Source: Chrysemys picta bellii (taxonomy: Eukaryota). Taken from it: 64,000 nt of DNA. Location of the stretch: positions 101,246,001 to 101,310,000 of the forward strand of contig NC_088797.1 in the NCBI RefSeq assembly GCF_011386835.1. Reading direction: 5' to 3'. The position numbers and the translations under genes are program-made. Positions 34,081 to 56,654 of the stretch are shown one piece after another; within the stretch, counting starts at the first letter, position 1; the number at the start of each line of letters is the position of its first letter. The notes beneath the pieces are model-generated. The model did no database searches and was not told where the DNA came from. It saw only the letters and a program-made list of their open reading frames with translations.

Positions 34081-36111
34081 AGACTTGTGAAATGTGCTCA
34101 TCACCTGCTATGTGTGCAGGTATGGTGAATAAGGTAGACATAGTTAGACTACACATAAATTAGCCTTACTTTCTGGCAGACAGCTCCTTAGAAATCCTCC
34201 ATCATCTTCATCTCAGGCAGAGACCAGTCCTTATAATAGATTCTGAAGGTCAACAAATTCAGGTTCCGTTGAACCAATGGGGAAGTGAGTGCCAGCATGG
34301 AAGGCCCTGCATTGGGAACATACAGGCTCAGATGTATTAGACTCCACAGCCACGTCTAAACTAGCAAAACAGGTCAAGTTAGCTAACACATTTTAAAGCA
34401 GGACTTTGCACCCCATATAGATGCATCATCGATGGAGTTTACACAGGGCAAAAGTGGTTTTTGAAACAATGTGTTAGCTGATTGGTGGTGGAGAGCCTAG
34501 AGTTAACCATGACCAGTTAACATTTTTTTAAGCACAGGTGTCTAGGTGCAAAGTCCTATTTAGCATTTTGTTTGTTAAATTGTGTTAGCTAACTTGTTTT
34601 AATATACAACCTATTTGCTGAGTCCGGACATGGCCTAAATCGGGGAGTGCCCTAGGCAGTCTCAGATTCTGGTAATCACATTCACAGTGTTCATTATTAT
34701 TGCTTGGTTTGCAGAAACTGGGGCGTATTTCAATTCATATTTGGCTCGTTGGCAAGCATCAGGCTCCCACATTTACACAAGGATCGCCTATTCATCAAGT
34801 GTCAACCCAGGATGACTCACTGTGATAAAAGATTTATGACACAATAGCTACTACTGATATCTGGCCATAAACATTTAGGCTGGGATTTTCAAAGGAGCCT
34901 GAGGCCCCAATCCTATGAACAGTTATGCCTCTTCTTAACTTTACTATCATGAATGATCCCATTGATTTCAGTGGGGACTACTCACAGTAGCAAAGTTAAA
35001 CACTTGCATAACTGTTTGCTGGATCAGGGCATGAGAGAGTCAGGTGCCCAATTCCCAGGGAATTTCAATGAGATATGAGCACCAATTTCTTTAGGCGCCT
35101 TTGAAAATCCCAGATTTAATATATTACAGATATAAATAAAATAACTGTCCATTACAAGAAAGCTGTGGAAAGGTTTGGGTGGCTCAAGCAGCAGCCACTG
35201 ACACAGCATAGCACAGATTAATAGTATCAAAGTAGTTCTTAGGCATTGGCACAATAGTTTGCTGTTAATTGCAACAAAGTGCATTAACCACCAGAGAAAA
35301 GCCCATTGAAATCAAATTGATGTATTGGTTCAGAGATGAATTAGCACTCAGATTTAGAATTAAAAAATAGTCCCATATATTAATGTGGAAGATATTTCTC
35401 TTTTTTCTCCTCACCTCAAATAGCTATATAATAAGCTCTTATGAGCTTAATAAGAAACCCCTGGTTGATTGTTCTGAATCTCCTGTATATAATCTTAAGG
35501 AAAATGGGTTGCTTTAATCCTAGATATATCAACTCAACCAGTAAACTTGGATTTGCCAGAGCTCCAGGAGAAGACTGTCTTTTTCCTTAGCAACCATTTT
35601 AATCCAGGTCCCCTGCTTGTCTTAATTTTGGCTGTAGTGTGGAAATGTACTGCTTTCAAATATTTTTCAGTCCCTTCCTGCTCTTAGAAGAGTTTAATAT
35701 CCTCTCAATACATGGGTTTAACTCCAGTTATCAGAAAACCAGAGTGTGCAATTGAAGGGCAAATGCACCTCTTAAGAGAAGGGAGCATCTACAGCAGGGG
35801 TGTCAAACTCAATTGCACAGGGGGCCAAAACTCAAAACTCGCGGGCCGAACAGTATAACCATTTATTTAACAGACTAAATATTTATGTTTTTTAACCATT
35901 AATATGAACCAAAATACAGGATATCATTCCAAAATAAATACATTTCAACTTAAAATATTTTGCTCTTCATAAAAAAATATCCTGTCAATACAATACATTC
36001 AAAATCTGTACATGCTGGAATATTAAAAAATCTGAAAATATAAATAAAAAATTGAATTTAAAGCAAAAGTATAATCATAACAAATCATAACATTCCATTT
36101 TCTTGTCCTAT

Positions 36112-37920
36112 TTAGTCAGAGCCTGATACTTGGAGTCTTTTCTTTGCAACAAGTTCGTTTATGTTTGGGGTTAGGTTCTGTGTTGTGAAGATTCTCAGGA
36201 TCGATTGCAGGTGTTCATCAGTGAGGCGACTCCTGTGTGACGTTTTGTTAATTTTCATCACAGAGAACAGCTGCTCGCACAGATATGTGCTGCCAAACAT
36301 GGACAGGATTCGAGCCGCATGTTGGCGGAGCTGCGGCATCGCTTCAGGAATGAAGCGAGTGAACTGTGCTGGCCCCGCAGTGTCGTACTTTGCCTTCAGT
36401 GTCCCGTTACATTGCAGTTCTATCAGCTCCATCTGCATTTCTACAGGTGCGGTTTCCACATCGACTGCAAATGGGTTGCGAAGCAGCTCGAAGTTACTTT
36501 TCTGTGCCTCAAAGTCACTGAAGCGCCGTGCGAACTCAGTGCGCAGCGCGCTGAGTTTTTCAGCAAAGGTGGCATTTGGGAAAACTGTGGCACTTTCTTG
36601 GTTCCGTATTACTTGGCAACAGGGAAAGTGAGACAAGTTGCATTGGTGCATTTGTGTCTCCCATAAGCGCAGCTTCACTTGAAATGCCTTCACTGCATCA
36701 TGCATATCGGTTATTATGTGCTCCCGTCCCTGGAGTTGAAGGTTTAAAGCGCTAAGATGCGACGTTATGTCAGCCAGGAACGCCAACTCACATTTCCACT
36801 TTTCATCCCGCAGAACTGTGCAGTCTTTCCCCTTACTGTCCATGAACTGGCAGATTTCCTCTCGCAGCTCAAAGTGTCTTTTGAGAACTTTTCCCCGACT
36901 TAGCCACCGGACCTCCGTATGATATGGCATATCGCCAAACTCGCTATCTATTTCCCGCAGAAAAGACTGGAATTGGCGGTGATTTAAACCGTGGGCTCTG
37001 ATAAAGTTGACGGTTTGTGTTACAGTGTTCATCACATGATCCATTTTTAGGACTTTAGCACTCAGCGATTCCTGGTGTATGATGCAGTGATACACTGTCA
37101 ACTCACCGGCACAGTTCTCCTCCCGCATCTTTGAGCGCATCCTTCCCACCAGTCCATTTTTTTCACCACACATAGCAGGTGCGCCATCTGTTGTAAGTCC
37201 AACGAGTTTTTCCCACGGCAGTTTCATGTCGGTTACACTTTGAAATACATTTCCAAAGATGTCTTCTCCTTTCGTTGTCCCGTGCATCGATTTAATGTCC
37301 AGTATTTCCTCTGTTACGCACAAATTGGAATCCACACCACGGATAAATATCGCCAGCTGTGCAGTGTCAGTCGCGTCAGTAGTTTCATCCACGGCAAGGG
37401 AGTATGCAACAAAATCTTTTGCTCTTTCAATCAACTGTGTTTTCCAATCAGTCGCCATCTCACAAACCCGATTAGCAACAGTGTTTCTGCTGAGGCTTAC
37501 ATTTGCAAACGCTCGCGTTTTATCTGGACAAAGGACGTCGCACACTTTCATCATACAATTCTTTACGAATTCCCCCTCGGTAAACGGCCGTCCTGATTTG
37601 GCGATCTCTTCGGCCACAATGAAACTTGCTTTCACAGCAGCTTCACTTTGTGATTTTGCTTTGGTGAAAAACGTCTGCTGGGATGTCAAATTCTTCTTCA
37701 ACTCCTCTACCTTTTGTAGCTTCTGTCCTGCGCTCAGGTTTTTGAATTTGTTCTCATGTTTCGTCTCGTAGTGCCGTCTTAGGTTATACTCCTTCATTAC
37801 AGCGATATTACTCCCGCAAAGGAGACACACTGGTTTACCTGCAATTTCAGTAAACATATACTCATTCTCCCACCGGCTTTGAAAGCCTCGGTTTTCAGAA
37901 TCAATTTTTCTCTTGGCCAT
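36112..37920 (-). CDS. hAT transposase, 602 aa, uninterrupted (automated pipelines tend to label such proteins GTF2IRD2-like)
   Basis: BED-like finger CLLC...YNLRRHYETKH. Catalytic VD178ETTD, TTD245GAPAM and YLCE549QLFS, plus CIIH (CxxH) and VRWLS motifs. C-terminal hAT dimerisation region RSRLTDEHL. Confidence 0.97.
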   Translation of the reverse strand: MAKRKIDSENRGFQSRWENEYMFTEIAGKPVCLLCGSNIAVMKEYNLRRHYETKHENKFKNLSAGQKLQKVEELKKNLTSQQTFFTKAKSQSEAAVKASFIVAEEIAKSGRPFTEGEFVKNCMMKVCDVLCPDKTRAFANVSLSRNTVANRVCEMATDWKTQLIERAKDFVAYSLAVDETTDATDTAQLAIFIRGVDSNLCVTEEILDIKSMHGTTKGEDIFGNVFQSVTDMKLPWEKLVGLTTDGAPAMCGEKNGLVGRMRSKMREENCAGELTVYHCIIHQESLSAKVLKMDHVMNTVTQTVNFIRAHGLNHRQFQSFLREIDSEFGDMPYHTEVRWLSRGKVLKRHFELREEICQFMDSKGKDCTVLRDEKWKCELAFLADITSHLSALNLQLQGREHIITDMHDAVKAFQVKLRLWETQMHQCNLSHFPCCQVIRNQESATVFPNATFAEKLSALRTEFARRFSDFEAQKSNFELLRNPFAVDVETAPVEMQMELIELQCNGTLKAKYDTAGPAQFTRFIPEAMPQLRQHAARILSMFGSTYLCEQLFSVMKINKTSHRSRLTDEHLQSILRIFTTQNLTPNINELVAKKRLQVSGSD

Positions 37921-38011
37921 TGTTGGGGTCTAGCTTTGATTTGATATTAGCGTTGTATACATCAACAGACCGCGAACTTGAACCGCGGCTTGCCGTTGGC
38001 GGCAATTGCAC

Positions 38012-38031
38012 TGCATCATGGGATTTGTAGT
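38012..38031 (-). promoter_or_regulatory. ZNF143/THAP11-like motif upstream of the transposase (also 56511-56530 in copy 2)
   Basis: Minus strand ACTACAAATCCCATGATGCA, ending ~90 bp upstream of the ATG, matches the recalled ACTACAnnTCCCAnnATGC consensus. Confidence 0.55.
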
Positions 38032-38749
38032 GTGTGTTATTGGGGCGTCATATCACAGGGCCATTAAAAACAGATATATAAAACGATTTCGCGGGCCGGA
38101 TATAATTGTATGGCGGGCCGGATGTGGCCCGCGGGCCTTGAGTTTGACACATGTGATCTACAGTATATCTCAGGCTGGAAGCAGAGTTGTTAAGGAAAGT
38201 ACAGTCCTGCTGGCAGGCTCCAAACTAGGTATTATGCATTGATATATGGCAGAAATGAGCAGCCCAAAGCCATGTATCATGCTAAAGATTGTGCAGTGAG
38301 GGTTTCCATTTTGTCCTTCCTCCAGTAACAAATATGAACATTAAACAAAAGAATAAAATAAATCTAACAGGAAAAAATGATTTGCATTTTTAAAGTTTCA
38401 TGCTTAGTAGATTTGTTCTTCTAAAAGTTCAAACAAATCTCTTGAAGGTAGGTCCTTGCTAACACAAAGGCAGTTCTTTGCCCTTCTACAAAGCTGTGTA
38501 ACGTTTTACTTTCTGTGCTAGACGTGCTAAGCAATCCATAACTGGTTAACACTAAAGGGAAACATTCAAGGGTAGCTGGGCTAAAATTAGAGCTAGCTTT
38601 GTTCTAAGAGCAGGGGTACGTAGTCACATGTATGTCAGTATCCTTTCACTCTATCTCAGTGAAATTCACCCCTGTGCAGATGGCCAGCACACAGTTGATG
38701 AACAAGTCACACATAAGCCCTATTTAGCCCTCCTAAATTCATGGAGTAT

Positions 38750-38962
38750 AGGTCCATCAATGTCTATTAGCCAGGATGGGCAGAGATGGTCTCCCTAGCC
38801 TCTGTTTGCCAGAAGCTGGGAATGGGCGACAGGGGACAGATCACTTGATGATTACCTGTTCTTTTCATTCCCTCAGGCGCACCTGGCATTGGCCACTGTC
38901 AGAAGACAGTATACTGGGCTAGATGGACCTTTGGTCTGACACAGCATGGCTGTTCTTATGTT
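38750..38962 (+). mobile_element. CR1 LINE 3' fragment
   Basis: Ends GGGCTAGATGGACCTTTGGTCTGAC...TTCTTATGTT. Same family as 11856, 33905 and 59885. Confidence 0.85.
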
Positions 38963-39339
38963 GAGAGTTTAACTGGGACTTAAGTGGTGCCTAGGCCTCA
39001 TGCACAATATCATCCTCTGCAGTCCTAATGCACCTGTCATTGTATTATCACACCTCCATTCTTGTGAGCAGGCAGGGTACTCAGGAATGGGCACCCTATG
39101 ACAAACTGAGAATGCAGGATTCTTGCACATTCCGTGTGAAAGGCCCCATACAAGTGTATTTAAAATGTAAACAAAATAATCATTAAAAATTCAGAGATTT
39201 TAGGAGAACCATGCAAGAGTGAAATAGGCCAGGTTTGGATAATTGGGGAGGCAGGAGGCAAATAGTCTATAGGGGCAATAACAGCACAATGGGATAATAC
39301 CACAGGGATTAAACGCAGCCTTGGCTCTCAAGAAATAGG

Positions 39340-39900
39340 ATTTTAAAGTCATTTCCCATCATGACTACTGCACCCTCCTTCTCTTTGGCCTTCCTTACAC
39401 CCATCTTGCGCCCCTTCAGTCCATACAGTTGTTGCTGGCAAGATCATCATCTTTGCCTATCAATCTGGCAACATCACTCCACTCTTTGAAACCTTCTCCA
39501 CTGCATCAAATTCCAGCATCTTTTCCTCCAGGCCCTGCTTATCTGACTTACTCTTATTTCACTATTGCCTCTCAGATCTCTATTCCACTAGTAATGCCAG
39601 CCTTGCCAGCACTTTGTCTGCTTCTCTCAAAAACATCTCTGTGCCTTTTCCATCATCCTCTGTGAACTGATTCAGCTAGTCACCACCCACATCCAAATTC
39701 CCACTTCTATCAGGATGCTCACAAAATGTGAATCAACAAACACAATTCCAGGAGCTCTCTTTTATTTGTCATTTTCAAATATCCAACTGTGCTGCACACA
39801 GGCCTTTACTGAATAACTGCATCATCTCACTGCTGTGCCCCTTCCTTCATTACATTGTTTAGACTGTAAGCTCTCTGGGGCAGGCACTGTACTTGTTTGT
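39340..39900 (+). mobile_element. L2 LINE 3' remnant
   Basis: Decayed ORF2 C-terminus (LQSIQ...AR, then TPLFETF, similar to L2 HVTPLL), followed by the L2 tail TAGACTGTAAGCTCTCTGGGGCAGG. Confidence 0.65.
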
Positions 39901-42900
39901 ATGTCTATATGGTGCCTGAAATGCTTTAGGGCCTCAGGGTGAATTCCACTCTTGTGCAGACTTAAGTGCTGTCCAAAGCCTTGTGCAGTAAGTCCCATAA
40001 GCTGGCGTGGTGCAGAAGTCAGGCGAAGTCTCTCTTCACAGGGCTGAATTTTACCTTCAATTCATAAGAAACATTTAGAGACAAGGAGATGTGTTGTTTT
40101 ATTTTGAGAACCAGCTTTGCCGTATACAGGTTAAATTTGACTCCACAGATATTTCAGTGAGGTATTTTAAACCATTTGCTTTATATCCTGTTTACTCAAA
40201 ACAATACTTATGTTTTGAAAAATATCCCTTGGCCAAACCAAAATATCACACCCACCCGCCCAACACTCTGCTCCATCTACTTCCAAGCAGAGTTCATTTT
40301 TTACATATACTTATCTCACAGGAGACATCATGCACATGTAAAATCGAATTGCAAAGGTGAATGCTTATAAAATATTGATCCACAACCTCACCCAACACAA
40401 GCCAAGGAGGGTGACTGGCTGAGAGTGTTGCACTTTATCCTTCACTTGTAGTGATATGCCTTATATTTTCCCACAAGAATGTGAGATAAGGCTAGAGTGT
40501 AAGCTTCATCATTCACTCTGTTGGTTTTGCTTGGTTTGAAATCAAACATTTTATCATATATTAAACCACCAGGCGTGGTACAACATCCCACACTTCTACC
40601 ATCTTACAACTGATAAACTGAGCTCAGGACTGAACATGGATTACCTGCATGGCGATGCATTGTCATTGGCTATCTAGAAGACAGCATTTTGTGCCCATAT
40701 TTTAGCCAGATGTTGTCTGTGCGATTTGGGAGTTTAACCTAAATATCTACACCCTTCAACCTGCAAAACTTGGGCAAAGAAAAATCTTACTATAAATTCA
40801 CCTGATTCAGTGCAAACAACTGTTATGGATCCTTGTCCCTTCTCTATGCTGATTCTTGAGATGTCCTAGGGTTGGCCTGGCTAGCATTAAAACAAACCCT
40901 ACAAAACATAAAACCCACTCTGGGCTTCTCTATCTCAATTACAGGGCTGCTACTGGTTATAATCTTTAGCAGCTGCAATCACCATAAAAAACATAAATAG
41001 TTCAAAACACACCTCAGGAGTTCTCTTCCTAATTTTCTACACTAGAAGCCTTTCTTGGGAGCTACCTGGCTGGTCTCTGAGTTTCCTTTCCAGCCACACC
41101 CACAAAAACCCTAACTGACAAATTAACAAAGCCCAGCTGGATGCTCCACTGTAGTGAAAGCCAAAATACTGAATTTTCTTCCCCGGGATTAGCTCAGAGG
41201 AGGGTTCCCTTAAGATCAAAGGGCCAGGACATATCTATTACAGTTTCTCACATATTTGCAGCCCCGTGGTACTTACTGCAATTTGCTGACATCTCCACAG
41301 CTTTGTAATCGCTGGATTTCTGTATGTAATCAGAGCAACCCAGTGATAGCAGATTGCCAAGAATTTTCAATAGGCAGGTATACCCATGTTAGGAGTTACA
41401 GATATCTTATAGAACTTGTTTAGGGTGTTGAGCCTTTGGTCAATACAGCAGCTGGTATGTTTCAATCTTAGCCAATCACCAGTCACAAGGCTGCTTTTAA
41501 CTGTGCCCTGTATTGTGATCAGAAAGAAGTTAGCAGACATGTGCTGTGCAAAGTATGCATCAAACTATTGAGACTTTTTCAGAGTAATTTAAAATACAAA
41601 TGTTTTAACTATTTGTACTAATTCTTATTGTACAACTCAGCAAATTTTTAGATTTTAACAATGTGCTTTGTTTCATTTGCAATGAGTGAAGCTGAATGCA
41701 GGTTAAGTTGAACCAGTGAAACTTTATTAAATATGTGGACTGCTCTCTCTACATAGACTGAGAGCAACTCAGCCAAACTCCTCCAAGTTCTCTGTTCCAC
41801 TGGTGTCTTGTCAATAACAGTCTCTCCAGGAACACTGGCTCTCTGACTCAAGTCCAACAGATCATGATCCACTTCTTATTTTACAGTAGGTGAAAGGATT
41901 TGTATTTAAAAACTTATTTTTGTCCTAACTAGATTAAGTTGGCAAGATCTTAGTGGGTCTTTCCCCAGTGGAATTGTATAGCTGGCTTAGAAGTTAAAGT
42001 GCTTAAAATATGCAAGATAAGACTTCCTGTGTGTCCAAGGCGTATTTGATTTGCTCTAGGGGTAGTTTGGATATGATAGTTGATCCCAGCTGTCAGCCAT
42101 TACTCAGAACTGTACTTTAGCCACACCTTCCTGTGACTCAGCGCCAGCTTTCATCCCCTACACTCTGTGAAACATTCCACTGCTGCTAAGTCATCAAATG
42201 TAACAACGTTGAAAACTTTGGTATTCATTTGTTCCTTTTATATATAGTGTGTATATATACACACTTAATACAATGATGTGCCCAACCAACAATTGCTTCA
42301 GGGTTTTATAAAGGCTGTAAGTAGCCTGCAAATGGGTCCAAAGCGTCGAAGAACAGGTCTGTCATGCAAACAAACAATGACTGGTCAACACTTTAACTGA
42401 TTGAAAAAATCTTATTAAAATCATTTCCTTAGCATTTAGGCTTCAAACCAAAGCAAGTATCAAGAAGTTAATTGTCAAGATGCTTAGTGTGAACTATTCC
42501 AACATACGTTCTTTCAAACACTGCCTCCTTGGCCTTCTATCTATCCAGCCAGCCAAGTCAGTAGTTACATGGCCTTATTCCCCGTAATGTCTCTGAGTCC
42601 TTCCCGGGGATGATCCTGTCCCATGCTATCTGAAAAACAGTGTCTTCACAGCTCTTACCTTACACAATAGAGTTAGACTAAAATGTAGGGGGAAATCAAC
42701 ACCTTGCTCCAAACTCTGAGTGGAAATTGGAATTTGCATCTTCTCTAGTAATGAAAAATATCCCCAGCCTAGGTGCATTCTCCCAGTCCTAGGAAATGTT
42801 GTAAGACACTGTTGTAGTGGCTGCCATCTTGGCTGAGACAGTAACTGGAGCCTTCCACAGGTGAAAGTATAAGTCTTCACAGCTTGAGCCAAAGAGGCAG

Positions 42901-43299
42901 GTTCTCAGGCTGAGAGCTGTAACAGATTTACATCCTCTGTGGATGGGGCAAAAGGGGCACACATAAGACACACTGACCAGTGGATTACACTGTAACACTA
43001 TAAAAGCCACTTTAGGGTCACATTTTAAGTTATTTCCACATCTCACAGTCTAGTGGGACCTTATTTGATACCTCCTTCTCCACTTTGGCGCACAGAAAGG
43101 AGAAAGGAACTGAGAGTGAAGAATGAAGCAATTTCTTCATCGTTTCCCTCTTACTTGTCTAATTGGACATTTGTGCACATAATTACCTGAACTACGAGCA
43201 GTTTAAAAATAGTAGGCCTCAGAGATAGAGCTAAAATGTCACAGTTTCAAGTGGAATGCAGTTATATGAATACTGGGTGACCCAGGGACCTCTTGATGC

Positions 43300-46977: not shown

Positions 46978-47237
46978 CAGTGTTGCCAGTTTATCACAAA
47001 TCTCACAATAGTTAATATTCTTCTTAAAGCTCCAGCACCTGGAGTCAAATGATTAGGTGAAAAATCTCAGCTTATTTAAAAAGAAAGTAAGTTTCTAGAC
47101 CTCGTGGCTGCAGAGTTGAAAACATTACCTGCGTACACTCAAAAACCAAAAGGCAAATAGAAACCAAACATCAATTCTTTTTTAAGATTTTGGGGGCCTG
47201 ACTCATAATTTTTGAACAGTTGAGGTTGGCAATACTG
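46978..47237. mobile_element. Old hAT-type MITE; second degraded copy at about 48580-48845
   Basis: TIRs CAGTGTTGCCA / TGGCAATACTG. Internal TTCTTAAAGC...CCTGGAGTCA.ATGATTAG shared with ~48620. TSD not conserved. Confidence 0.6.
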
Positions 47238-49394
47238 AAACAACGGTGTCTCAGCTACGAAGAATGTTTCGCATCTCTGCAAATCGCATCTCTGCAAATG
47301 CAAAGAGGTCAAGCTAGTGACACAGACATCTTGCTGTGCTTCAAGAATCTATTTAATTAAAGATGGGACTCAGCAGCCACAGCCTTCTGTTGGAAACAGA
47401 GACAACTAGCCTCGTGGCTAATGGCACAGATTGGCCATTACAGTCGTAGCTGGCTGTGTTAATTTTTCAATCAATTTGAACTTCCTGCGTTAATGGGACC
47501 GGTGGTTGCATAAATAACTAATTAAAACTCAAATATCTCCAGACACCTCTTTCCTCTAGGAAAATATTTGGACCACAGCCAGTTTGCTAATCATTTCATT
47601 GTCACCACTCTAAAGGTGGGGTGTGAAGTTCTGAAGTTTTAGGCTCCAGTATGAATCACTGAACAAACTCTTCGGGATGCTAAATCGAGGTGTATGTACA
47701 CCACGAGGAGAAAATGTCCCTTTCTCCACCTGCATAAGAGAATACACAGTCACTTAGAGCCAGGTTCTGAATAAGGACAGGAATATATTCGATGATGCTG
47801 TAATTGTGATCATTTCCATGAGAGGATTATTTACTGCCCTATTTTCATATTTGTTTCAAATTGTATTTGTCACATGGACCACATTGCGCCTTCCCACACA
47901 TTTTCCCATGGGGAAGAAACTCTCTGAATTCTCCTACAATGATGGTGTTTGCCCTCCGCATAGAAGCAAATTCTCATTCCCCAAACCTCTTGGATCCTTT
48001 AAGAGCAACACAGCTTCAAGCAGATCCCCTGAAAGCATGTTGGGGCTAAGCTGCCAGTGACTCACCAACCTGTAGCTACCCTGAGGAGGGGACACAGGGT
48101 CAATGGAGCACCATTCGTGTCCATTACATGAACGTCTTGCCTGGGAGTTTGTGCAGCCATGAGTTGTACTAACTCCTGAGCAGATTCCTCACTGGGTTGG
48201 TGGAGATTGGGGGACAATGTGTGCTCCCCAGAGCACCCTCTTCAAATGAGGATCCTGAATACCACAGTGAACCCTCAGTGTCCAAGGAAAATAGTGTGAC
48301 ACTCTCCCCAAACACTATATATACAAACTGCTATATAAGCAGATGACCTTGGGGCAACCTGGGCCCAAGACATTACAGAGCTTATAATAATCAATAATAA
48401 ACTCTGCCACAGATGGTACTTCCCCATCCCTGCTTCCTCGTGCAAATGAGATCTGCACATGGTGGGAGCAATGCATGTGGGTCAGCAGGTGCAATCTGGG
48501 CACATTTCTTTCCTTCCGCCACCGACGCTTCAGAGACTGAAAACAGAGAGAACTTTTAACGTCTTATGTAACATACAGGGCCTTGCCAACTCTCAAGATG
48601 TTCTCGCAATATTTGATGTTTTTCTTAAAGCCTCCTGGAGTCAGATGATTAGATGAGAATCTCTGCTTTCAGGGTTTTAAAAATAAAAGTTCCTAGCCCT
48701 CACGACTCTAGAGAAGAAGCTTGACAATATAAACCTTAAATACTTCATACCCACAAGACAATAGAAAGAACCCAAAACTTATTTGAAAAAAGTCATCATT
48801 TTGGAGGTCTGATTTGAGATTTTAAATGTTTGGCATTGACAATATTATTCTCACAATTTAATCTGAATTTATCTCTCTCTAACTCTCTCTCTAATTTTGG
48901 GGGGGGGGGGGAGTGAGGGGGTGGCATTTTACACCTCCTGGACATTAAAATTAATTTAGTACTTTTCACTTTCAGACTTTCACTGGCACAGGGAAGTGAT
49001 TATTTGCTCAAAAACAACTGTTTTTCTTGAAATTTAAAAGATTCATAAAACAGTTTAGTTTGGTTTTAGGCTTTAATCAGCTTGTTTGGTTTTATTAAAC
49101 CATATCTAAATTTTGGGCCATATTCGAGTTGTGTCCTACGAACAGTGTACAACTTACAATAGTTTGTGTTCATGCAGGCCTGCAAAATCCTGAGCAACAA
49201 TACCAATGACATTAGCTGTTTTCTCAAGAGCAAAGATAAATGTCACCACTAAAACATTCTCTTTTGTCTGTATAATTTAACTAATAAAAAAGTTGGTCCA
49301 AAAAAAGATATTACCTCGCCTACCCTGTCTTTCTAGTTTAACTGCAGCAAAGTTACTGAATCAGGTAAAGTAATATAAGAATGTCAGTGTTTCT

Positions 49395-49992
49395 CTAGAA
49401 CAAAGAGGAGTACTTGTGGCACCTTAGAGACTAACAAATTTATTCAGGCATAAGATTTTGTGGGCTAAACCCCACTTCATCAGATGCATGGAGTGGAAAA
49501 TACAGTAGAAAGATATATATATATACACAGTACATTAAAAGACGGCAATTGCCTTACCAAGTGGGGGGTCAGTTCTGATGAGACAATTCAATTAAAGTGG
49601 GCTATTATCAACAGGAGGAAGAATCACTTTTGTAGTGGTAATCAGGGTGACCCATTTCAAACAGTTGAGAAGGAGGTGTGAGTAACAGTAGGGGGAAATT
49701 AGCATGGGGAAATTAGTTTTTAGTTTTTGTAGTGACCCATCCACTCCATGTCTTTATTCAGGCCTAATTTGATGGTGTCCAGTTTGCAAATTAATTCCAG
49801 TTCTGCAGTTTCTCGTTGGAGTCTGTTTTTGAAGGTTTTTTTGTCGAAGAATTGCCACTTTTAGGTCTGTTAATGAGTGTCCAGGGAGGCTGAAGTGTTC
49901 TCCGACTGGTTTTTGAATGTTATAATTCTTGACATTTGATTTGTGTCCATTTATTCTTTTGCATAGAGGTTGTCCAGTTTGGCCAATGTACA
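49395..49992 (-). mobile_element. Penelope-like retroelement 3' fragment (GIY-YIG endonuclease plus terminal repeat)
   Basis: ORF 49754-50014 contains MYIGQTGQPLCKRINGHKS...KPVGEHFSLPGHSLTDLKVAIL (Penelope GIY-YIG domain, frameshifted afterwards). Terminal segment ...AGTCTCTAAGGTGCCACAAGTACTCCTC on the minus strand. Confidence 0.92.
49448..49487 (-). ncRNA. Degenerate minimal hammerhead ribozyme motif of the Penelope element
   Basis: Minus strand GCAU-CUGAUGA-A-GUGGG-GUUUAG-CCCAC-AAAA-UC-UUAUGC: core CUGAUGA, stem II GUGGG/CCCAC, stem I GCAU/AUGC. GAAA is mutated to AAAA. Confidence 0.65.
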
Positions 49993-50796
49993 TGTGTTTC
50001 TCTAGAGCAGCCACTCTCTCATTGGTGCAGTGTCACATAAATGTAATGAGTTTTGTAAAGGATTTCGGAATAAACCAATTACACTCACAATACTCATCAA
50101 TTCTCACTACTAGGAGTGTGTATTTAGTTTCCAAATTTACCTCCAAGTATCTGGGACAAGTATCTTCTCCTTTGTATGAGAAAGGCAAGTATAAGAGCCA
50201 GGTACTTCCTCAGACCCATGATATTTCCTGGTTGCTTTCTCAAAAGCCCATCTCATTATTATTAACTAATTATTTATTAACTAATCACAATATGAGGCAC
50301 AGCAAATCTTTAAACATAAAAAGTTATTTGTAATGATTTTTTCTGAAATTGACAACATTTAGAGGTTGCATAAAAAGTGCTGAAAAGGCCATTTCTGCCT
50401 GGAGCAAATAGCTGACTAAACAATAAATGCTCTGGCCTTCCTTTTCTAAACACCAGCTGTGGCAGGATGAGTGGGTCCATTCACTGGGAAGCAAATGGAC
50501 ATTAATAAGACCTCATCTTATTGGTCAGGCTGTGGGGTTTCTCATGGGATGCAGTGATCCTGGAGAGCAGGCAGTTTGTGAAGAGAATATTTGTGTAATC
50601 TTACCTAGATGGAGCTGTGCTCTGGCCTTTCGAGGGGAAAGGAGCACATTGCAACTGATTTTTAGATCATTTCTCTATATTTCAAGAAGACTAAGTACCT
50701 TTATCATTTCTGATCAACGTAGTTAAACTAGTGGCATCTGGTATTTATAAACACAGCAATCTTTTCCCAGGGATTAAAGTCCTCAGAGAGGCACTC

Positions 50797-51497
50797 CAGC
50801 CTAGATCCACAAAAAGGACATGAGTGGAATGTCACTTTGTGGTGCCTAGAGCATCACAGGAACAACACTGCAAACCATAAAGCTGAGTTAGGCACTTAGA
50901 CTCCCCGTACAATGAATGGGGAGAGAGAAGCACCTTAGAATGTGATTCCCAAAGCCAGCATGCTGGGCAGGGAGTCACCTAAGATAGCCAATGGGAGAAG
51001 CTGGCACAAGAGCTGTATGTTAAGTCCCACCCTTCTCTCGGAATTAGGGCACCTAAATCTGGGCTGCAAGGAGTCATGAACCCAGGGAAGATAGGCATTC
51101 AGATGGCTAAGTCATGTACAGCTGGGGTAGTGGGGGGAGGGAGAGGAGAACCTCCCTTATAACCTTTAGCTCAGTGGTTAGGATACTTATCTGGGATATG
51201 GGAGATCCCTGGTTCAAGTTAGGCAGCCAAACATCTACCTTTCTCTTGGTTCATATATTGCTCTGGGGCTTAGGTAGGCGATAGGGGTTTGGGAGCCTAG
51301 AGGCAGCAGTGCATATGCTCAGAGGCAGAAAGGTAGGTGCCTATGGAACTTTTACTGCAAAACTTAGATGCCGAGCAACTTTAGGCATCTACATGGTTAG
51401 GTAGCAGCTGAGTGGGAGTTTTGTGGAACACACTGGTGCTTAGAAGGGACTTAGTCCTAAAAATGGGACTTAAGTATCTTAGTACATTTGTGGGGCC
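50797..51497. mobile_element. Degenerate MITE-like element with internal tRNA-like segment
   Basis: Ends CCTAGATCCACAAA / TTTGTGGGGCCC. Repeated AGGCAC(C/T)TA motifs. TAGCTCAGTGG (51167-51177) and GGTTCAAGT (51211-51219). Confidence 0.5.
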
Positions 51498-52999
51498 CCT
51501 GTTGTAAGCTTATTTGAACCTGCTCTATGACAAAAAAGCGTCAAGAAAATAATTTCATGGAGTTATTTCATCCATGTGCAATCCAAAATTATGGACCAAT
51601 CTTAGAAAAATATGGGAGATTAAATTCTATTTTACTATGTATAACCTTTATCCTAGTTTTTTTCCCCATAGCCCTTCTTGTATTGTTCTTTCTGCCTTCT
51701 CCTTTTTGCTTTTCCTTCACAGCCATTCTTTCCATCATGGAGTCTGTTCCCTTCAGTATTGTTGTTCTCCCCTCATTCTTCACCTCTGTATCTGTGTTTG
51801 CTTAGGTTCTTGTTCTATCTTTTCCTTTTTAACCTTTAGTAAATTAGGCCTCTTTCTTCTCCCTACTCTTCCAATTCCTTGATCCATAGTCCTCAATATA
51901 GTTCTTCACCCACATATTGGTTCATTTGGTAAGAAAAGCTAGTGTAGTTCTTTGCTCTCACAATTCAATGTTCATTGTTTCAATAGAGACATTGCACTGG
52001 TTGCATTTTATAACTAGACCATTCCATTTTACTTTTTCCATAATTGTATGTGTTCTCTCTCTCTCTCTCTCTCCCCCTCACCCCCTCCCCCGCCCCCCCG
52101 GGGCCAGACTATTAAAGCCCAGCCTCCCTTTTTGTCACCTATGTGATACATTTCCCGTAATGCTTTATCATTCTTTGAGGGAGCCATCTGAATTTGGTCA
52201 GGTCCACTCCCCTTCTCAGATGAAAGTGAGTGGAAATGCCTTGTTTTGCCTTGACTGTAACATCCTCTGTGGCCTCTTGGATCCTCCCCATTGCAGCCTA
52301 TTCAAAATACCCACAAGCTGGGCCATTCTCTCTGCTGGGATACTGACTTCCTCCCCCATTTCACACCAAACATCACCTTTCTGTCTCCACCCAGCTCTCT
52401 GCCATTGTTTCCTTCTACCGCTGTGCTGTCAAACTGTATATAGATCAGAAGCTAGAGTAGCATCTGGTTGATTTAAACCTATTTCTTTCTTATTCTTGAC
52501 CATGTTTATTTTCTCTATGCTTGAAAATTCAATAAATGTTCAATTATAGACAAAACACTAAAATATTTTGAATTAAATGTGGTACATTTCATTGTTCTAT
52601 TTTTGTGGGCAATTAATCACCATGTATAACAATTACCAGAACACTTGCATTTGTGAAATATTGTATCAGTCATTTGTGTTACAATCCAACCTACCTGAGA
52701 GACCTGTTACTCAAATATAAAGCTTCTGTATTGCCTCTGCCTCACAGTTACAGTTTTTCATCCTGGTTTGTGCACTGTTTTTGTTATAATCTGTCAGTTG
52801 CAGTACAGATATTCCTGATGAAATGTTCAGCATATTGCAGTAATCCTGTACTTTGTCCCTTATGTGCCCAGTAAGTGCTTCACTGTAATCTCACGATGAT
52901 ACACAGAGTCTTATTGCAGTTAGAAAATTAATTAAAATAAGACTGAATATTGTGTCAGGCTATTAGACAAGAATCCAGCTAGTGTAATATAACATTAAA

Positions 53000-54170
53000 A
53001 TAGAGTAAAATACTAAAACACTCCAAAAGGGAAGTAAGAGCATGAGTATCAACCTCCGGGCAGAGCATTAAAAACCAGAGCACAATCCCTTAACTGGCTG
53101 CAAATTCTAAACTTAGATTTAACCAATCAACTGCACCAAGTGCAAATTCCTCAGGAACTTTAACAGCCTTTACACAGAGTCACAGACAGTCCCCTTGAGT
53201 ACTTCGTTCAATCTTGCTACCCAGGTGAGTATATATCTCTGTGATAAACAGCCCCTTACACCAAGAACAACAGCAATATTCAGGTTACTCCTGATCCCAA
53301 GGGACCAGTCACTTGCCCTAAAATTGCGTTTTAGGTCTCACACCAAAGACAATGTTTGTAGTCATTCCTATAGTAAACTATATGAAGATTTATTAAATAG
53401 GAAAAGGAAATTGGAGAGTTATTTACAAGGTTAAAGCAAGCAAATAGACACAAGAGAAGTTACAATCTTAGGTTTCAAAGTTAATATGGGCTTCTATAAT
53501 CACCAAGCTATATTTGATCTTTAGGTCTAATCCAAGCTAAGCAGCTAGGGATCTCTTGTTTGTGCCTAGAAGCACCTCTCAAGGTCCAAGCAGCGTAGAG
53601 ATACCTACTTCCTTTCATTTGGGGTTTTTATCGCCCTCCTGCCATGGCTTTGAGCTTCAAATTCAGCTGATGGGAGGAGTCCACTTGCATGACTCATCGT
53701 CACCAGGAGGAGAGCAGAACAATAAGAGTCTTTAGTCTCTTGTTGATGGTTTCTCAATCCAGATATGGGGAGTTTCTGGTTGTAAGATCCATCCATATCC
53801 TTTCTGGTATTGATGGGTCTCCTCTTTTGGGAGGGAGTGTAACAATTTCTGTAGAAGAGCAGCTCTTCACACTAATTGATGTCCCTTTCCTGTATGGCGA
53901 GTCAGACAGTCACAGAGGTTTACAATACAACCGCTCAGATATGACATTACAGTAAGGAACACTGATATTACAAGTAAGATTAATGCAAGCAGCAACTCAC
54001 AAGCATTCAATAGAGTCTAAATACTAAACGCTTTCTTATAATTCTAATACCTATTTTATCACTATTTAACTCACAAGTGAGCCAGACACATTCCAGCTAT
54101 TTATTTGTTAGTGTCCACTTGAGACATGGGGTCCATGGCATGAGCTGGCACCTGGCCTGCCAGCATCACA
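53000..54170. mobile_element. Solo-LTR-like element related to 27268-28381; left boundary uncertain
   Basis: Shared internal blocks (CTGATCCCAA.GGA.CAG.CAC, TTTATTA) with 27540-27650. Ends GCCAGCATCACA. No matching TSD found. Confidence 0.55.
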
Positions 54171-54293
54171 TATACAAATAAAATATAGTTGGGCAAATGT
54201 TGAAATAGCCAGTGTATAACCCTGACTCATTCTGTGAGAAATCATGTTGTGTGTGAAGCTGCAAGAATTTAAGTACATTATGAACATCTATAT

Positions 54294-56654
54294 CAGGGGT
54301 GTCAAACTCAATTGCACAGGGGGCCAAAACTCAAAACTCGCGGGCCGAACAGTATAACCATTTATTTAACAGACTAAATATTTATGTTTTTTAACCATTA
54401 ATATGAACCAAAATACAGGATATCATTCCAAAATAAATACATTTCAACTTAAAATATTTTGCTCTTCATAAAAAAATATCCTGTCAATACAATACATTCA
54501 AAATCTGTACATGCTGGAATATTAAAAAATCTGAAAATATAAATAAAAAATTGAATTTAAAGCAAAAGTATAATCATAACAAATCATAACATTCCATTTT
54601 CTTGTCCTATTTAGTCAGAGCCTGATACTTGGAGTCTTTTCTTTGCAACAAGTTCGTTTATGTTTGGGGTTAGGTTCTGTGTTGTGAAGATTCTCAGGAT
54701 CGATTGCAGGTGTTCATCAGTGAGGCGACTCCTGTGTGACGTTTTGTTAATTTTCATCACAGAGAACAGCTGCTCGCACAGATATGTGCTGCCAAACATG
54801 GACAGGATTCGAGCCGCATGTTGGCGGAGCTGCGGCATCGCTTCAGGAATGAAGCGAGTGAACTGTGCTGGCCCCGCAGTGTCGTACTTTGCCTTCAGTG
54901 TCCCGTTACATTGCAGTTCTATCAGCTCCATCTGCATTTCTACAGGTGCGGTTTCCACATCGACTGCAAATGGGTTGCGAAGCAGCTCGAAGTTACTTTT
55001 CTGTGCCTCAAAGTCACTGAAGCGCCGTGCGAACTCAGTGCGCAGCGCGCTGAGTTTTTCAGCAAAGGTGGCATTTGGGAAAACTGTGGCACTTTCTTGG
55101 TTCCGTATTACTTGGCAACAGGGAAAGTGAGACAAGTTGCATTGGTGCATTTGTGTCTCCCATAAGCGCAGCTTCACTTGAAATGCCTTCACTGCATCAT
55201 GCATATCGGTTATTATGTGCTCCCGTCCCTGGAGTTGAAGGTTTAAAGCGCTAAGATGCGACGTTATGTCAGCCAGGAACGCCAACTCACATTTCCACTT
55301 TTCATCCCGCAGAACTGTGCAGTCTTTCCCCTTACTGTCCATGAACTGGCAGATTTCCTCTCGCAGCTCAAAGTGTCTTTTGAGAACTTTTCCCCGACTT
55401 AGCCACCGGACCTCCGTATGATATGGCATATCGCCAAACTCGCTATCTATTTCCCGCAGAAAAGACTGGAATTGGCGGTGATTTAAACCGTGGGCTCTGA
55501 TAAAGTTGACGGTTTGTGTTACAGTGTTCATCACATGATCCATTTTTAGGACTTTAGCACTCAGCGATTCCTGGTGTATGATGCAGTGATACACTGTCAA
55601 CTCACCGGCACAGTTCTCCTCCCGCATCTTTGAGCGCATCCTTCCCACCAGTCCATTTTTTTCACCACACATAGCAGGTGCGCCATCTGTTGTAAGTCCA
55701 ACGAGTTTTTCCCACGGCAGTTTCATGTCGGTTACACTTTGAAATACATTTCCAAAGATGTCTTCTCCTTTCGTTGTCCCGTGCATCGATTTAATGTCCA
55801 GTATTTCCTCTGTTACGCACAAATTGGAATCCACACCACGGATAAATATCGCCAGCTGTGCAGTGTCAGTCGCGTCAGTAGTTTCATCCACGGCAAGGGA
55901 GTATGCAACAAAATCTTTTGCTCTTTCAATCAACTGTGTTTTCCAATCAGTCGCCATCTCACAAACCCGATTAGCAACAGTGTTTCTGCTGAGGCTTACA
56001 TTTGCAAACGCTCGCGTTTTATCTGGACAAAGGACGTCGCACACTTTCATCATACAATTCTTTACGAATTCCCCCTCGGTAAACGGCCGTCCTGATTTGG
56101 CGATCTCTTCGGCCACAATGAAACTTGCTTTCACAGCAGCTTCACTTTGTGATTTTGCTTTGGTGAAAAACGTCTGCTGGGATGTCAAATTCTTCTTCAA
56201 CTCCTCTACCTTTTGTAGCTTCTGTCCTGCGCTCAGGTTTTTGAATTTGTTCTCATGTTTCGTCTCGTAGTGCCGTCTTAGGTTATACTCCTTCATTACA
56301 GCGATATTACTCCCGCAAAGGAGACACACTGGTTTACCTGCAATTTCAGTAAACATATACTCATTCTCCCACCGGCTTTGAAAGCCTCGGTTTTCAGAAT
56401 CAATTTTTCTCTTGGCCATTGTTGGGGTCTAGCTTTGATTTGATATTAGCGTTGTATACATCAACAGACCGCGAACTTGAACCGCGGCTTGCCGTTGGCG
56501 GCAATTGCACTGCATCATGGGATTTGTAGTGTGTGTTATTGGGGCGTCATATCACAGGGCCATTAAAAACAGATATATAAAACGATTTCGCGGGCCGGAT
56601 ATAATTGTATGGCGGGCCGGATGTGGCCCGCGGGCCTTGAGTTTGACACATGTG
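54294..56654 (-). mobile_element. Full-length autonomous hAT DNA transposon, copy 2, 2,361 bp
   Basis: Same TIRs and length as copy 1. Its own perfect 8-bp TSD ATCTATAT (54286-54293, 56655-56662). No differences from copy 1 seen in the stretches compared by eye. Confidence 0.98.
54611..56419 (-). CDS. hAT transposase, 602 aa, identical translation to 36112-37920
   Basis: ORF track gives the same 602-aa protein. All four overlapping antisense ORFs are also identical between the copies. Confidence 0.97.
   Translation of the reverse strand: MAKRKIDSENRGFQSRWENEYMFTEIAGKPVCLLCGSNIAVMKEYNLRRHYETKHENKFKNLSAGQKLQKVEELKKNLTSQQTFFTKAKSQSEAAVKASFIVAEEIAKSGRPFTEGEFVKNCMMKVCDVLCPDKTRAFANVSLSRNTVANRVCEMATDWKTQLIERAKDFVAYSLAVDETTDATDTAQLAIFIRGVDSNLCVTEEILDIKSMHGTTKGEDIFGNVFQSVTDMKLPWEKLVGLTTDGAPAMCGEKNGLVGRMRSKMREENCAGELTVYHCIIHQESLSAKVLKMDHVMNTVTQTVNFIRAHGLNHRQFQSFLREIDSEFGDMPYHTEVRWLSRGKVLKRHFELREEICQFMDSKGKDCTVLRDEKWKCELAFLADITSHLSALNLQLQGREHIITDMHDAVKAFQVKLRLWETQMHQCNLSHFPCCQVIRNQESATVFPNATFAEKLSALRTEFARRFSDFEAQKSNFELLRNPFAVDVETAPVEMQMELIELQCNGTLKAKYDTAGPAQFTRFIPEAMPQLRQHAARILSMFGSTYLCEQLFSVMKINKTSHRSRLTDEHLQSILRIFTTQNLTPNINELVAKKRLQVSGSD

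What the first reader, a model, noticed from the sequence alone, without database searches (positions are those of the whole stretch)
35795..56654. Two apparently identical, intact autonomous hAT transposons: candidate active DNA transposon in a reptile
Both copies are 2,361 bp with an intact 602-aa transposase (BED finger, D178/D245/E549, CxxH, RW). I saw no nucleotide differences in the stretches compared. Their different perfect 8-bp TSDs show two independent cut-and-paste insertions, not a segmental duplication. Every other element in the window is decayed. Currently active DNA transposons are rare in amniotes, and this group includes genome-engineering tools such as TcBuster and resurrected SPIN. 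Two copies within 18.5 kb fit local hopping or a very high recent copy number.
Basis: partly seen in the sequence, partly recalled or inferred. Interest (0 to 1): 0.9.

Follow-up and report, generated by a model that had tools for sequence, protein, structure and literature searches.

The report
Twin young hAT-6_XT transposons in turtle
The two identical 2.4-kb elements are real sister copies of hAT-6_XT, a jumping gene reported in 2024 as horizontally transferred into turtles; this painted-turtle genome holds about 400 near-identical copies, and at least one window copy is missing from other animals, so the family moved very recently, but it is not a new kind of element.

Summary
Window 35795-38155 and 54294-56654 are 2,361 bp with 0 mismatches. 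Their perfect 8-bp TSDs differ (ATCTACAG, ATCTATAT), their flanks are unrelated, and each has an intact 602-aa transposase ORF.

The genome is Chrysemys picta bellii (HiFi assembly SLU_Cpb5.0). [quoted passage not shown] That study found no full-length copy in the old C. picta assembly.

This assembly holds about 405 copies:
- In an unbiased sample of 40, 38 are full-length and 33 of those keep the ORF.
- Private divergence averages 0.08%.
- 61 of 62 TSDs fit nnnTAnnn.

The window pair shares L159W, found in only 3 copies genome-wide, so the two are sisters made by a local hop. Four other nearby pairs also share private variants.

Contigs from four other sequencing runs cross a precise empty site for copy A, so that insertion is not fixed.

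Activity today is plausible (about 0.6) but unproven. Turtle DNA evolves slowly, the RNA evidence is inconclusive, and no excision was seen.

The scan noted this family before on other DNA. A follow-up (s1-318379) reached the same reading for another copy.

The parts
35795..38155 (-). hAT-6_XT copy A, full-length autonomous element (2,361 bp; transposase gene reads on the minus strand)
   Evidence: Identical to copy B. It differs by 1 nt from the commonest natural copy in the genome. It is absent, with a precise empty site, in contigs of 4 other runs.
35787..35794 (.). TSD of copy A, left (ATCTACAG)
   Evidence: It fits nnnTAnnn.
38156..38163 (.). TSD of copy A, right (ATCTACAG)
   Evidence: The empty allele skips 2,369 = 2,361 + 8 bases with 8 ambiguous letters.
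36112..37920 (-). Transposase ORF of copy A, 602 aa
   Evidence: Pfam gives PF18658, DUF4371 and Dimer_Tnp_hAT. The AF2 model has pLDDT 84.4, and its top 12 PDB matches are all Hermes transposase.
38138..38155 (-). 5' TIR (sense CACATGTGTCAAACTCAA)
   Evidence: Read. 15 of 18 bases match the other TIR; the mismatches are at positions 3-5.
35795..35812 (+). 3' TIR (CAGGGGTGTCAAACTCAA read inward on the + strand)
   Evidence: The terminal 36-mer occurs 405 times in the genome; the control gives 0.
38091..38137 (-). 5' subterminal region with three GGCCCGC motifs (sense positions 19, 37, 59), a candidate transposase-binding repeat
   Evidence: Motif positions. Function is inferred by analogy with the subterminal repeats of other hAT elements.
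35841..35847 (-). 3' subterminal GGCCCGC motif (sense position 2309)
   Evidence: Function is inferred.
37445..37445 (.). Private variant C (A in nearly all other copies), giving L159W in the transposase
   Evidence: All four laid runs read A at the element's bulk depth. The exact 36-mer with this variant occurs only 3 times in the genome.
54294..56654 (-). hAT-6_XT copy B, full-length autonomous element, identical to copy A
54286..54293 (.). TSD of copy B, left (ATCTATAT)
56655..56662 (.). TSD of copy B, right (ATCTATAT)
54611..56419 (-). Transposase ORF of copy B, 602 aa
55944..55944 (.). The same private variant (L159W) in copy B

Best explanation
The two elements are sister copies of hAT-6_XT, an autonomous Buster-type hAT DNA transposon that entered emydid turtles by horizontal transfer. 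[quoted passage not shown] The 602-aa transposase has an N-terminal C2H2 finger and an RNase-H-like DDE core with an inserted helical domain carrying CxxH and RW. By inference from Hermes and TcBuster, it binds the 18-bp TIRs and probably the subterminal GGCCCGC motifs, excises the element, and reinserts it at nnnTAnnn targets with an 8-bp duplication. One copy carrying the L159W change gave rise to the other 18.5 kb away in the same orientation (local hopping), and the same lineage also has a copy on another chromosome. Both donor and new copy were kept. For a cut-and-paste element this implies transposition from replicated to unreplicated DNA, or repair of the excision gap from the sister chromatid (inferred). 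The pair belongs to a burst of about 400 near-identical, mostly coding-competent copies. The burst is younger than the allelic variation of the species, and the family is probably still mobile. Shown here: identity, TSDs, copy number, lineage sharing, the empty site and the fold. Inferred: the chemistry, the replicative route and present-day activity.
For: Identity, TSDs and unrelated flanks.
Family: the start of the published representative hAT-6_XT_MTT in Table S2 of PMC11008031 matches this element's end. The commonest natural protein is identical in Trachemys and Chrysemys, and a Trachemys copy is 99.7% identical in DNA.
Copy number: 405 hits for a terminal 36-mer and 405 for an ORF 36-mer, with 0 in controls.
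Unbiased sample of 40 chr1 hits:
- 38 are full-length, 33 of those keep an intact ORF, and 35 have perfect TSDs.
- Private substitutions average 1.92 per copy (0.081%), and 7 copies have none.
- Nonsynonymous plus stop versus synonymous is 43:17, close to the neutral expectation.
Target: T at position 4 in 62 of 62 TSDs and A at position 5 in 61 of 62. This is the Buster-type consensus (PMC3499496).
Local hop: L159W occurs in only 3 copies genome-wide, two of them here. Other neighbouring pairs share private variants: L023/L024 6.4 kb apart, L046/L047 7.4 kb, L042/L043 40.8 kb, L053/L055 134 kb. Clustering on chr1 gives P of about 0.03.
Not fixed: a joint 35786 to 38156 that skips 2,369 bases, with 8 ambiguous letters, appears in all four runs of three organism labels.
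Fold: AF2 pLDDT 84.4; the top 12 PDB matches are Hermes transposase, E 2e-9 to 6e-8. The catalytic residues are conserved.
Recent arrival: CpG observed/expected is 0.88 in the element against 0.18 in the rest of the window. A copy in the fish Hoplias malabaricus is 98.4% identical in DNA.
The assembly is built from PacBio HiFi reads (PMC13077969).
Against: No direct sign of movement today was found: no excision footprint, no somatic or de novo insertion, and no run on record as RNA that holds the ORF.
Turtle DNA evolves slowly. C. picta and T. scripta assemblies are 98.2% identical (PMC13077969). Zero differences over 2 x 2,361 bp therefore only bound the hop to roughly under 1-2 My, and the mean private divergence suggests a burst averaging about 1-3 My (inference).
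Long generations and deep coalescence mean an unfixed insertion can be old.
30 of 73 private substitutions are CpG transitions, as expected if the host methylates the copies.
Logan contigs show that the empty allele is present, not that the filled allele is absent. Only copy A was tested.
Whether L159W affects the enzyme is unknown.
Confidence: 0.85

Rival explanations
1. The family is recently extinct. The burst ended some hundred thousand to a few million years ago. The copies look pristine only because turtle DNA mutates slowly, and unfixed insertions are old standing variation kept by long generations.
For: Private divergence averages 0.081% rather than 0, and only 7 of 38 sampled copies have no private change. 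CpG decay is under way, with 30 of 73 private substitutions at CpG. No run on record as RNA holds the ORF. The genome evolves slowly (PMC4054807; 98.2% identity to T. scripta in PMC13077969).
Against: 87% of full-length copies keep the ORF, so hundreds of potential transposase sources remain. Several lineages have zero differences: the window pair, and 8 copies identical to one another (L003-L010, one of them, L006, with imperfect TSDs). There is a nested self-insertion. Copy A and another copy (earlier follow-up s1-318379) are both unfixed. Nothing in the sequence marks a shut-off.
Confidence: 0.3
2. The two copies are unrelated long-range insertions that lie 18.5 kb apart by chance because the family is so abundant.
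For: About 405 copies exist, so some close pairs are expected by chance: about 1.4 pairs within 20 kb genome-wide (own arithmetic).
Against: The chance that a given copy has a neighbour within 18.5 kb is about 0.6%. Both copies also carry a variant present in only 3 of about 405 copies. At least 7 pairs within 20 kb were seen in partial listings, and four other nearby pairs (6.4-134 kb apart) share private variants.
Confidence: 0.03
3. The identity is an artefact: a segmental duplication, gene conversion, or assembly collapse or polishing that copied one sequence onto two places.
For: Perfect identity over 2.4 kb is what such artefacts produce.
Against: The TSDs differ, both are perfect and both fit the family's target consensus. 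The flanks share no similarity. The assembly is from PacBio HiFi reads, which are longer than the element (PMC13077969). Independent short-read runs rebuild the same element sequence at several-hundred-fold depth.
Confidence: 0.01
4. The ORFs are domesticated host genes, as suggested by their RefSeq name 'GTF2IRD2A-like', rather than transposon genes.
For: RefSeq names them after GTF2IRD2, a real domesticated Charlie-type gene. One gene model fuses the ORF to N4BP2L2.
Against: There are about 400 dispersed copies, each with TIRs and its own TSD. Substitutions among copies look neutral. The insertion is present in some animals and absent in others.
Confidence: 0.01

Closest known systems
hAT-6_XT, turtle lineage (hAT-6_XT_MTT / _TSE; Hassan, Galbraith & Adelson 2024, Mob DNA 15:7, PMC11008031; first curated in Xenopus tropicalis in Repbase)
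   Same: It is the same element. The terminal sequence matches the published representative. A Trachemys copy is 99.7% identical in DNA, and the commonest transposase is identical in Trachemys and Chrysemys. The paper also reports under 1% divergence, a DDE triad, TIRs and TSDs, and horizontal transfer.
   Different: The paper found 0 full-length copies in the older C. picta assembly (BioNano-3.0.4, its Fig. S28) and left 'degradation or incomplete assembly' open. The HiFi assembly holds about 405 copies, nearly all full-length. New here: insertion polymorphism, lineages made by local hops, the TSD consensus, the fraction of intact ORFs, and a Hoplias malabaricus copy at 98.4% identity (Hoplias is not among the paper's hosts).
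TcBuster and the Buster family of hAT (including SPIN and Charlie elements)
   Same: 8-bp TSD with consensus nnnTAnnn (PMC3499496). Charlie/GTF2IRD2-type transposase architecture: C2H2 finger, DUF4371, hAT C-terminal region.
   Different: No sequence comparison with TcBuster or SPIN was possible here. Activity of TcBuster and of reconstructed SPIN is shown experimentally; activity of this element is not.
Hermes transposase (Musca domestica; PDB 2BW3, 4D1Q, 8SJD)
   Same: The predicted fold matches over about 520-600 aligned columns (E about 2e-9). The DDE, CxxH and RW motifs are shared.
   Different: Only 12-15% sequence identity; phmmer against PDB sequences finds nothing. Hermes belongs to the Ac family, with TSD nTnnnnAn.
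Ac/Ds of maize and other hAT elements known for local hopping
   Same: New copies sit kilobases from a related copy on the same chromosome, with donor and new copy both retained.
   Different: Here local hopping is inferred from shared private variants in a natural genome, not from tracked transposition events.
Recently active DNA transposons of vespertilionid bats (hAT, piggyBat) and Anolis (own knowledge)
   Same: An amniote genome with a very young burst of an autonomous DNA transposon that arrived by horizontal transfer.
   Different: Different families and hosts. The slow turtle clock makes dating coarser.

Membership tests
hAT superfamily | 8-bp target site duplication | tested here: met
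   Both window copies have a perfect 8-bp TSD. So do 62 of 67 other full-length copies examined (27 of 29, 35 of 38).
hAT superfamily | Short terminal inverted repeats | tested here: met
   18-bp TIRs, 15 of 18 bases matching, with positions 7-18 perfect.
hAT superfamily | DDE catalytic triad with CxxH and RW motifs in the insertion domain | tested here: met
   D178, D245, E549, C279-H282 and R338-W339 are invariant or at least 90% conserved in 38 homologues.
hAT superfamily | Hermes-like transposase fold | tested here: met
   AF2 model pLDDT 84.4. The top 12 Foldseek PDB matches are all Hermes, probability 1.00.
hAT superfamily | C-terminal hAT dimerisation domain (PF05699) | tested here: inconclusive
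   Pfam hit at residues 528-575 scores 19.7 bits, below the 21.4 cut-off. The region contains the conserved CEQLFS motif.
Buster family of hAT | TSD consensus nnnTAnnn (Ac family: nTnnnnAn) | tested here: met
   T at position 4 in 62 of 62 and A at position 5 in 61 of 62. The consensus is taken from PMC3499496.
Buster family of hAT | Transposase groups phylogenetically with Buster, SPIN and Charlie | not tested
   Only indirect support: all named homologues are 'GTF2IRD2-like', a Charlie-derived gene. No tree with reference Buster or Ac transposases was built.
hAT-6_XT (PMC11008031) | High nucleotide identity to the published representative, including the termini | tested here: met
   The start of hAT-6_XT_MTT in Table S2 (an OCR'd PDF) matches this element's 3' end, read by eye over about 130 nt. 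A Trachemys genomic copy is 99.7% identical over 2,361 bp. No full-length alignment to the printed representative was made.
Currently active transposon | Insertions polymorphic within the species | tested here: met
A precise empty site for copy A appears in 4 of 4 other runs.
Currently active transposon | Transposase transcribed in the germ line | tested here: inconclusive
   Many small runs hold 98% of the ORF words, but none is on record as RNA. Low-coverage DNA would also assemble a 400-copy element.
Currently active transposon | Excision and integration demonstrated | not testable with these tools
   This needs a cell or embryo assay, or detection of de novo insertions.

The most novel reading that the evidence does not exclude
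hAT-6_XT is transposing today in painted-turtle germ lines. That would make C. picta an amniote with a naturally active, autonomous Buster-type hAT: roughly 350 intact transposase genes, pervasive local hopping, and an insertion load that differs between individuals. No reconstruction would be needed to test it as a vertebrate-adapted gene-transfer tool, and its near-identical copy in a South American fish would link it to a live horizontal-transfer network.
Probability: 0.6. Interest if true: 0.7.

Novelty: already known. Interest (0 to 1): 0.4.

Why it matters
Naturally active cut-and-paste transposons are very rare in amniotes, and Buster-type hATs (TcBuster, SPIN) are used for genome engineering. 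The 2024 paper had already named this family and suggested it could be active.

This window and its genome add numbers:
- About 400 copies in a species where none was seen at full length before.
- About 87% of full-length copies have an intact gene.
- Clear local-hop lineages.
- An unfixed insertion.

This makes the painted turtle a practical system for several questions:
- Does an amniote tolerate an ongoing DNA-transposon invasion?
- How does the invasion spread locally?
- How fast does methylation-driven CpG decay disarm it?

It also shows that young repeats were lost from the older turtle assemblies, and that RefSeq names these transposase genes as host 'GTF2IRD2A-like' genes.

Tried and rejected
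- phmmer of the transposase against PDB sequences found nothing. Only the fold comparison reached Hermes.
- The look-up of encoding contigs could not return the C. picta record of P0001. The species was settled with the genome search instead.
The unbiased sample is therefore 40 copies from chr1 only, and the third L159W copy (C10:2260385) could not be read.
- MAFFT on 39 copies timed out. Pairwise BLAST alignments were used instead.
- RNA evidence is inconclusive. No holder is on record as RNA, and the small 'RNA?' runs that hold the ORF could be low-coverage DNA.
- The cluster that seemed to place the transposase in Chelydra and in N4BP2L2 proteins is chimeric. Chelydra P0138, Terrapene P0125 and Malaclemys P0130 contain no transposase; only C. 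picta P0135 does. No old shared insertion is implied.
- The 30 'hAT' hits in the new-assembly paper are the word 'hatchling'. That paper does not discuss this element.
- The element-to-flank depth ratios from contigs are only a rough guide, because the tool warns that depth is not copy number. They are about 270-385 in X1, X2 and X6, and about 60-100 in X8.
- Segmental duplication, chance proximity and domestication were considered and rejected (see the rival explanations).
Full report
**1. The observation**

An offset of 18,499 bases aligns window 35795-38155 with 54294-56654. There are no mismatches over 2,361 bp, and identity collapses on both sides.

Copy A is flanked by ATCTACAG on both sides, and copy B by ATCTATAT. 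One kilobase of flank on either side of the two copies gives no BLAST hit. These are therefore two insertions, not a duplicated segment.

Each copy has a 602-aa ATG ORF on the minus strand. The ends are 18-bp inverted repeats: CACATGTGTCAAACTCAA at the 5' end and CAGGGGTGTCAAACTCAA at the 3' end, matching at 15 of 18 positions. GGCCCGC motifs lie just inside both ends.

**2. The protein**

Pfam finds three regions:
- a SPIN-DOC-type C2H2 finger (residues 14-73);
- DUF4371;
- the hAT C-terminal region. This and DUF4371 score below their curated cut-offs.

In an alignment of 38 homologues, D178, D245, E549, C279/H282 and R338/W339 are invariant or at least 90% conserved.

An AlphaFold model built on that alignment has mean pLDDT 84.4. 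Its best 12 matches in the PDB are all Hermes transposase, with E 2e-9 to 6e-8. A sequence-only search of the PDB finds nothing. 'BED finger' is approximately right.

**3. Whose genome, and which element**

The best database hit is a Chrysemys picta bellii RefSeq protein. That protein, with its four private substitutions, is encoded exactly at C3:87.50 Mb of the window's genome. The contig lengths also agree. The assembly is therefore SLU_Cpb5.0 (GCF_011386835.1), built from PacBio HiFi, Hi-C and Bionano data of one male from Minnesota (PMC13077969).

A literature search turned up Hassan, Galbraith & Adelson 2024 (Mob DNA 15:7, PMC11008031). They describe hAT-6_XT as horizontally transferred into six turtles, including C. 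p. bellii, Trachemys and Malaclemys, five fishes and Xenopus tropicalis. [quoted passage not shown]

The start of their representative hAT-6_XT_MTT (Table S2) matches this element's end. A Trachemys genomic copy is 99.7% identical over the full 2,361 bp and has its own TSD. The commonest natural transposase sequence is identical in Trachemys and Chrysemys.

So the family, its horizontal transfer and its possible activity are already published. That paper found 0 full-length copies in the older C. picta assembly, and left degradation or incomplete assembly as explanations.

**4. The family in this genome**

A full-length DNA search scored 40 of 423 candidates. All were full-length and about 100% identical.

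Exact-pattern counts give 405 hits for the terminal 36-mer and 405 for a 36-mer in the middle of the ORF, at up to 2 mismatches, with 0 in reversed controls. There are therefore about 400 copies, nearly all of autonomous type, and few deletion derivatives.

To avoid bias toward the best matches, I fetched the first 40 chr1 hits in positional order. Searches show:
- 38 are full-length.
- 33 of the 38 keep the 602-aa ORF, and one more has an in-frame 12-bp deletion.
- 35 of the 38 have perfect TSDs.
- They differ from the commonest natural copy by 0-7 substitutions (mean 3.05).
- Private substitutions average 1.92 per copy (0.081% per site), and 7 copies have none.

Of the 73 private substitutions, 30 are CpG transitions. 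Within the ORF the split is 41 nonsynonymous, 2 stop and 17 synonymous, close to the 78% nonsynonymous expected by chance. That is neutral decay after insertion.

Across 62 TSDs, position 4 is T in 62 and position 5 is A in 61. This nnnTAnnn consensus defines the Buster family of hAT (PMC3499496).

The element's CpG observed/expected ratio is 0.88, against 0.18 for the rest of the window. This is expected for DNA that has spent little time in a methylated vertebrate germ line.

**5. The window pair is a local hop**

All 28 other aligned best-matching copies have A where the two window copies have C (element position 1651, window 37445 and 55944). The change is Leu159 to Trp. Chrysemys, Trachemys and Hoplias proteins all have Leu there.

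The exact 36-mer with this variant occurs three times in the genome: the two window copies and one on contig C10. With about 405 copies in 2.37 Gb, a given copy has a neighbour within 18.5 kb about 0.6% of the time. Sharing a 3-in-405 variant as well makes chance untenable. One L159W copy therefore seeded at least two more, one nearby in the same orientation and one on another chromosome.

The pattern recurs. These pairs each share private variants:

| Pair | Distance apart |
|---|---|
| L023/L024 | 6.4 kb |
| L046/L047 | 7.4 kb |
| L042/L043 | 40.8 kb |
| L053/L055 | 134 kb |

On chr1, close pairs exceed a uniform model (P of about 0.03 for under 20 kb and under 50 kb). Further pairs 3-4 kb apart appear on C5 and C22. 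One copy is inserted inside another at a GTATAACC target with an 8-bp duplication.

**6. The insertion is not fixed**

I laid contigs of four public runs on copy A with 1.5-kb flanks. The runs carry three organism labels, and two carry the label whose 2012 run matches the flanks almost perfectly.

All four gave a joint from 35786 to 38156. It skips 2,369 bases (2,361 plus one TSD), with 8 letters that fit either side, in contigs that run hundreds of bases into both flanks. That is the exact pre-insertion site, with no footprint. No listed contig bridges a filled junction.

All four runs read A at 37445 at the element's bulk depth. Element-to-flank depth ratios are about 270-385 in three runs and about 60-100 in the fourth. 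The tool warns that depth is not copy number, so these figures are rough.

Contigs prove that the empty allele exists, not that the filled allele is absent. An earlier follow-up in this scan (s1-318379) reported the same for a different copy.

**7. Age and activity**

C. picta and T. scripta assemblies are 98.2% identical (PMC13077969), and turtles evolve at about a third of the human rate (PMC4054807). If the two genera split some 20-35 My ago (own knowledge), the rate is about 0.3-0.45e-9 per site per year. The mean private divergence then corresponds to roughly 1-3 My. Zero differences between the two window copies only bound their split to under about 1.5-2.5 My. These figures are inference.

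Sequence identity alone therefore cannot show present-day activity, and unfixed insertions can persist for a long time in a long-lived species.

In favour of continued activity:
- There are hundreds of intact genes.
- Several lineages show zero differences.
- A copy has inserted into another copy.
- Two of two tested insertions are unfixed.

Against it:
- No RNA run on record holds the ORF.
- CpG decay is visible.
- There is no direct event.

I put present-day activity at about 0.6.

**8. Horizontal transfer**

Homologues at 70-83% identity are scattered over teleosts, snakes, a ray, frogs, a bryozoan and metagenome-derived contigs of element size.

A copy in a chromosome of the characiform fish Hoplias malabaricus lies next to a fish NLR gene. 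It is 98.4% identical in DNA over 1,958 bp, up to the exact 3' TIR. It is 5'-truncated and carries two frameshifting deletions, and most of its differences are C-to-T or G-to-A changes. Hoplias is not among the hosts listed in the 2024 paper.

**9. Verdict**

The element is a known, published family. The new content is quantitative and specific to C. picta: about 400 mostly intact copies, lineages made by local hops, and an unfixed insertion. The decisive tests are listed under next steps: population and pedigree genotyping, germ-line transcripts, and a cell assay with natural copies.

Noticed in passing
L031:5267-7216 (Hoplias malabaricus chromosome CM080106.1): A 5'-truncated hAT-6_XT copy in a South American characiform fish. 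It is 98.4% identical in DNA to the turtle element up to the exact 3' TIR, carries 3-bp and 5-bp deletions, and lies beside a fish NLR gene. Hoplias is not in the host list of PMC11008031, and this copy is closer to the turtle copies than any other non-turtle hit seen here.
   Followed up: partly
L017 (G000:C7:67782104-67786833): One full-length copy is inserted inside another at element position 59-66 (target GTATAACC, duplicated). This is a self-insertion of the family.
   Followed up: yes
L023, L043, L046 (each a member of a close pair: C3:196.04 Mb, C1:78.58 Mb, C1:89.78 Mb): In three local pairs, one member has completely unmatched 8-bp flanks while its partner has a perfect TSD. This could come from recombination or deletion between neighbouring copies, or from aberrant (alternative) transposition after local hops. 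It was not resolved.
   Followed up: no
G000:C10:2260385-2260420: The third and only other copy carrying the L159W variant lies on a different chromosome from the window pair.
   Followed up: no
P0135 (XP_065450571.1, C. picta N4BP2L2 isoform X4); acceptor near window 37846: A RefSeq model joins N4BP2L2 exons to transposase residues 26-602. The junction lies just after an 'ttgcag' at codons 24-25, which looks like a cryptic splice acceptor. This is a possible host-transposase fusion transcript. Other models (P0121, P0129) also replace the first residues.
   Followed up: partly
PMC4054807 (2013 painted turtle genome paper): [quoted passage not shown] The number is close to the ~405 hAT-6_XT copies counted here. 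Whether it is the same family under another name was not tested.
   Followed up: no
window 38591-39127: A stretch beside copy A reaches summed contig depths of about 50,000 to 1.8 million in all four runs, with many loose ends. This is a very abundant interspersed repeat; its type was not determined.
   Followed up: no
L053, L055, L057 (C1:139.93, 140.06, 149.32 Mb): Three copies share a 2-bp deletion (element positions 90-91), and two of them share two further substitutions. This sub-lineage spread over 134 kb and then 9 Mb on one chromosome.
   Followed up: partly
window 37945, run X8 (organism C): In the run with the third organism label, the element reads G instead of T at its full depth, and the element-to-flank depth ratio is several-fold lower. 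A related turtle seems to carry a slightly different, less abundant population of the same element.
   Followed up: no
L054 (C1:140054746) and L051 (C1:120760648): These are rare defective derivatives. L054 keeps only 686 bp of one end and lies 7.2 kb from a full copy. L051 has a 33-bp internal deletion.
   Followed up: partly
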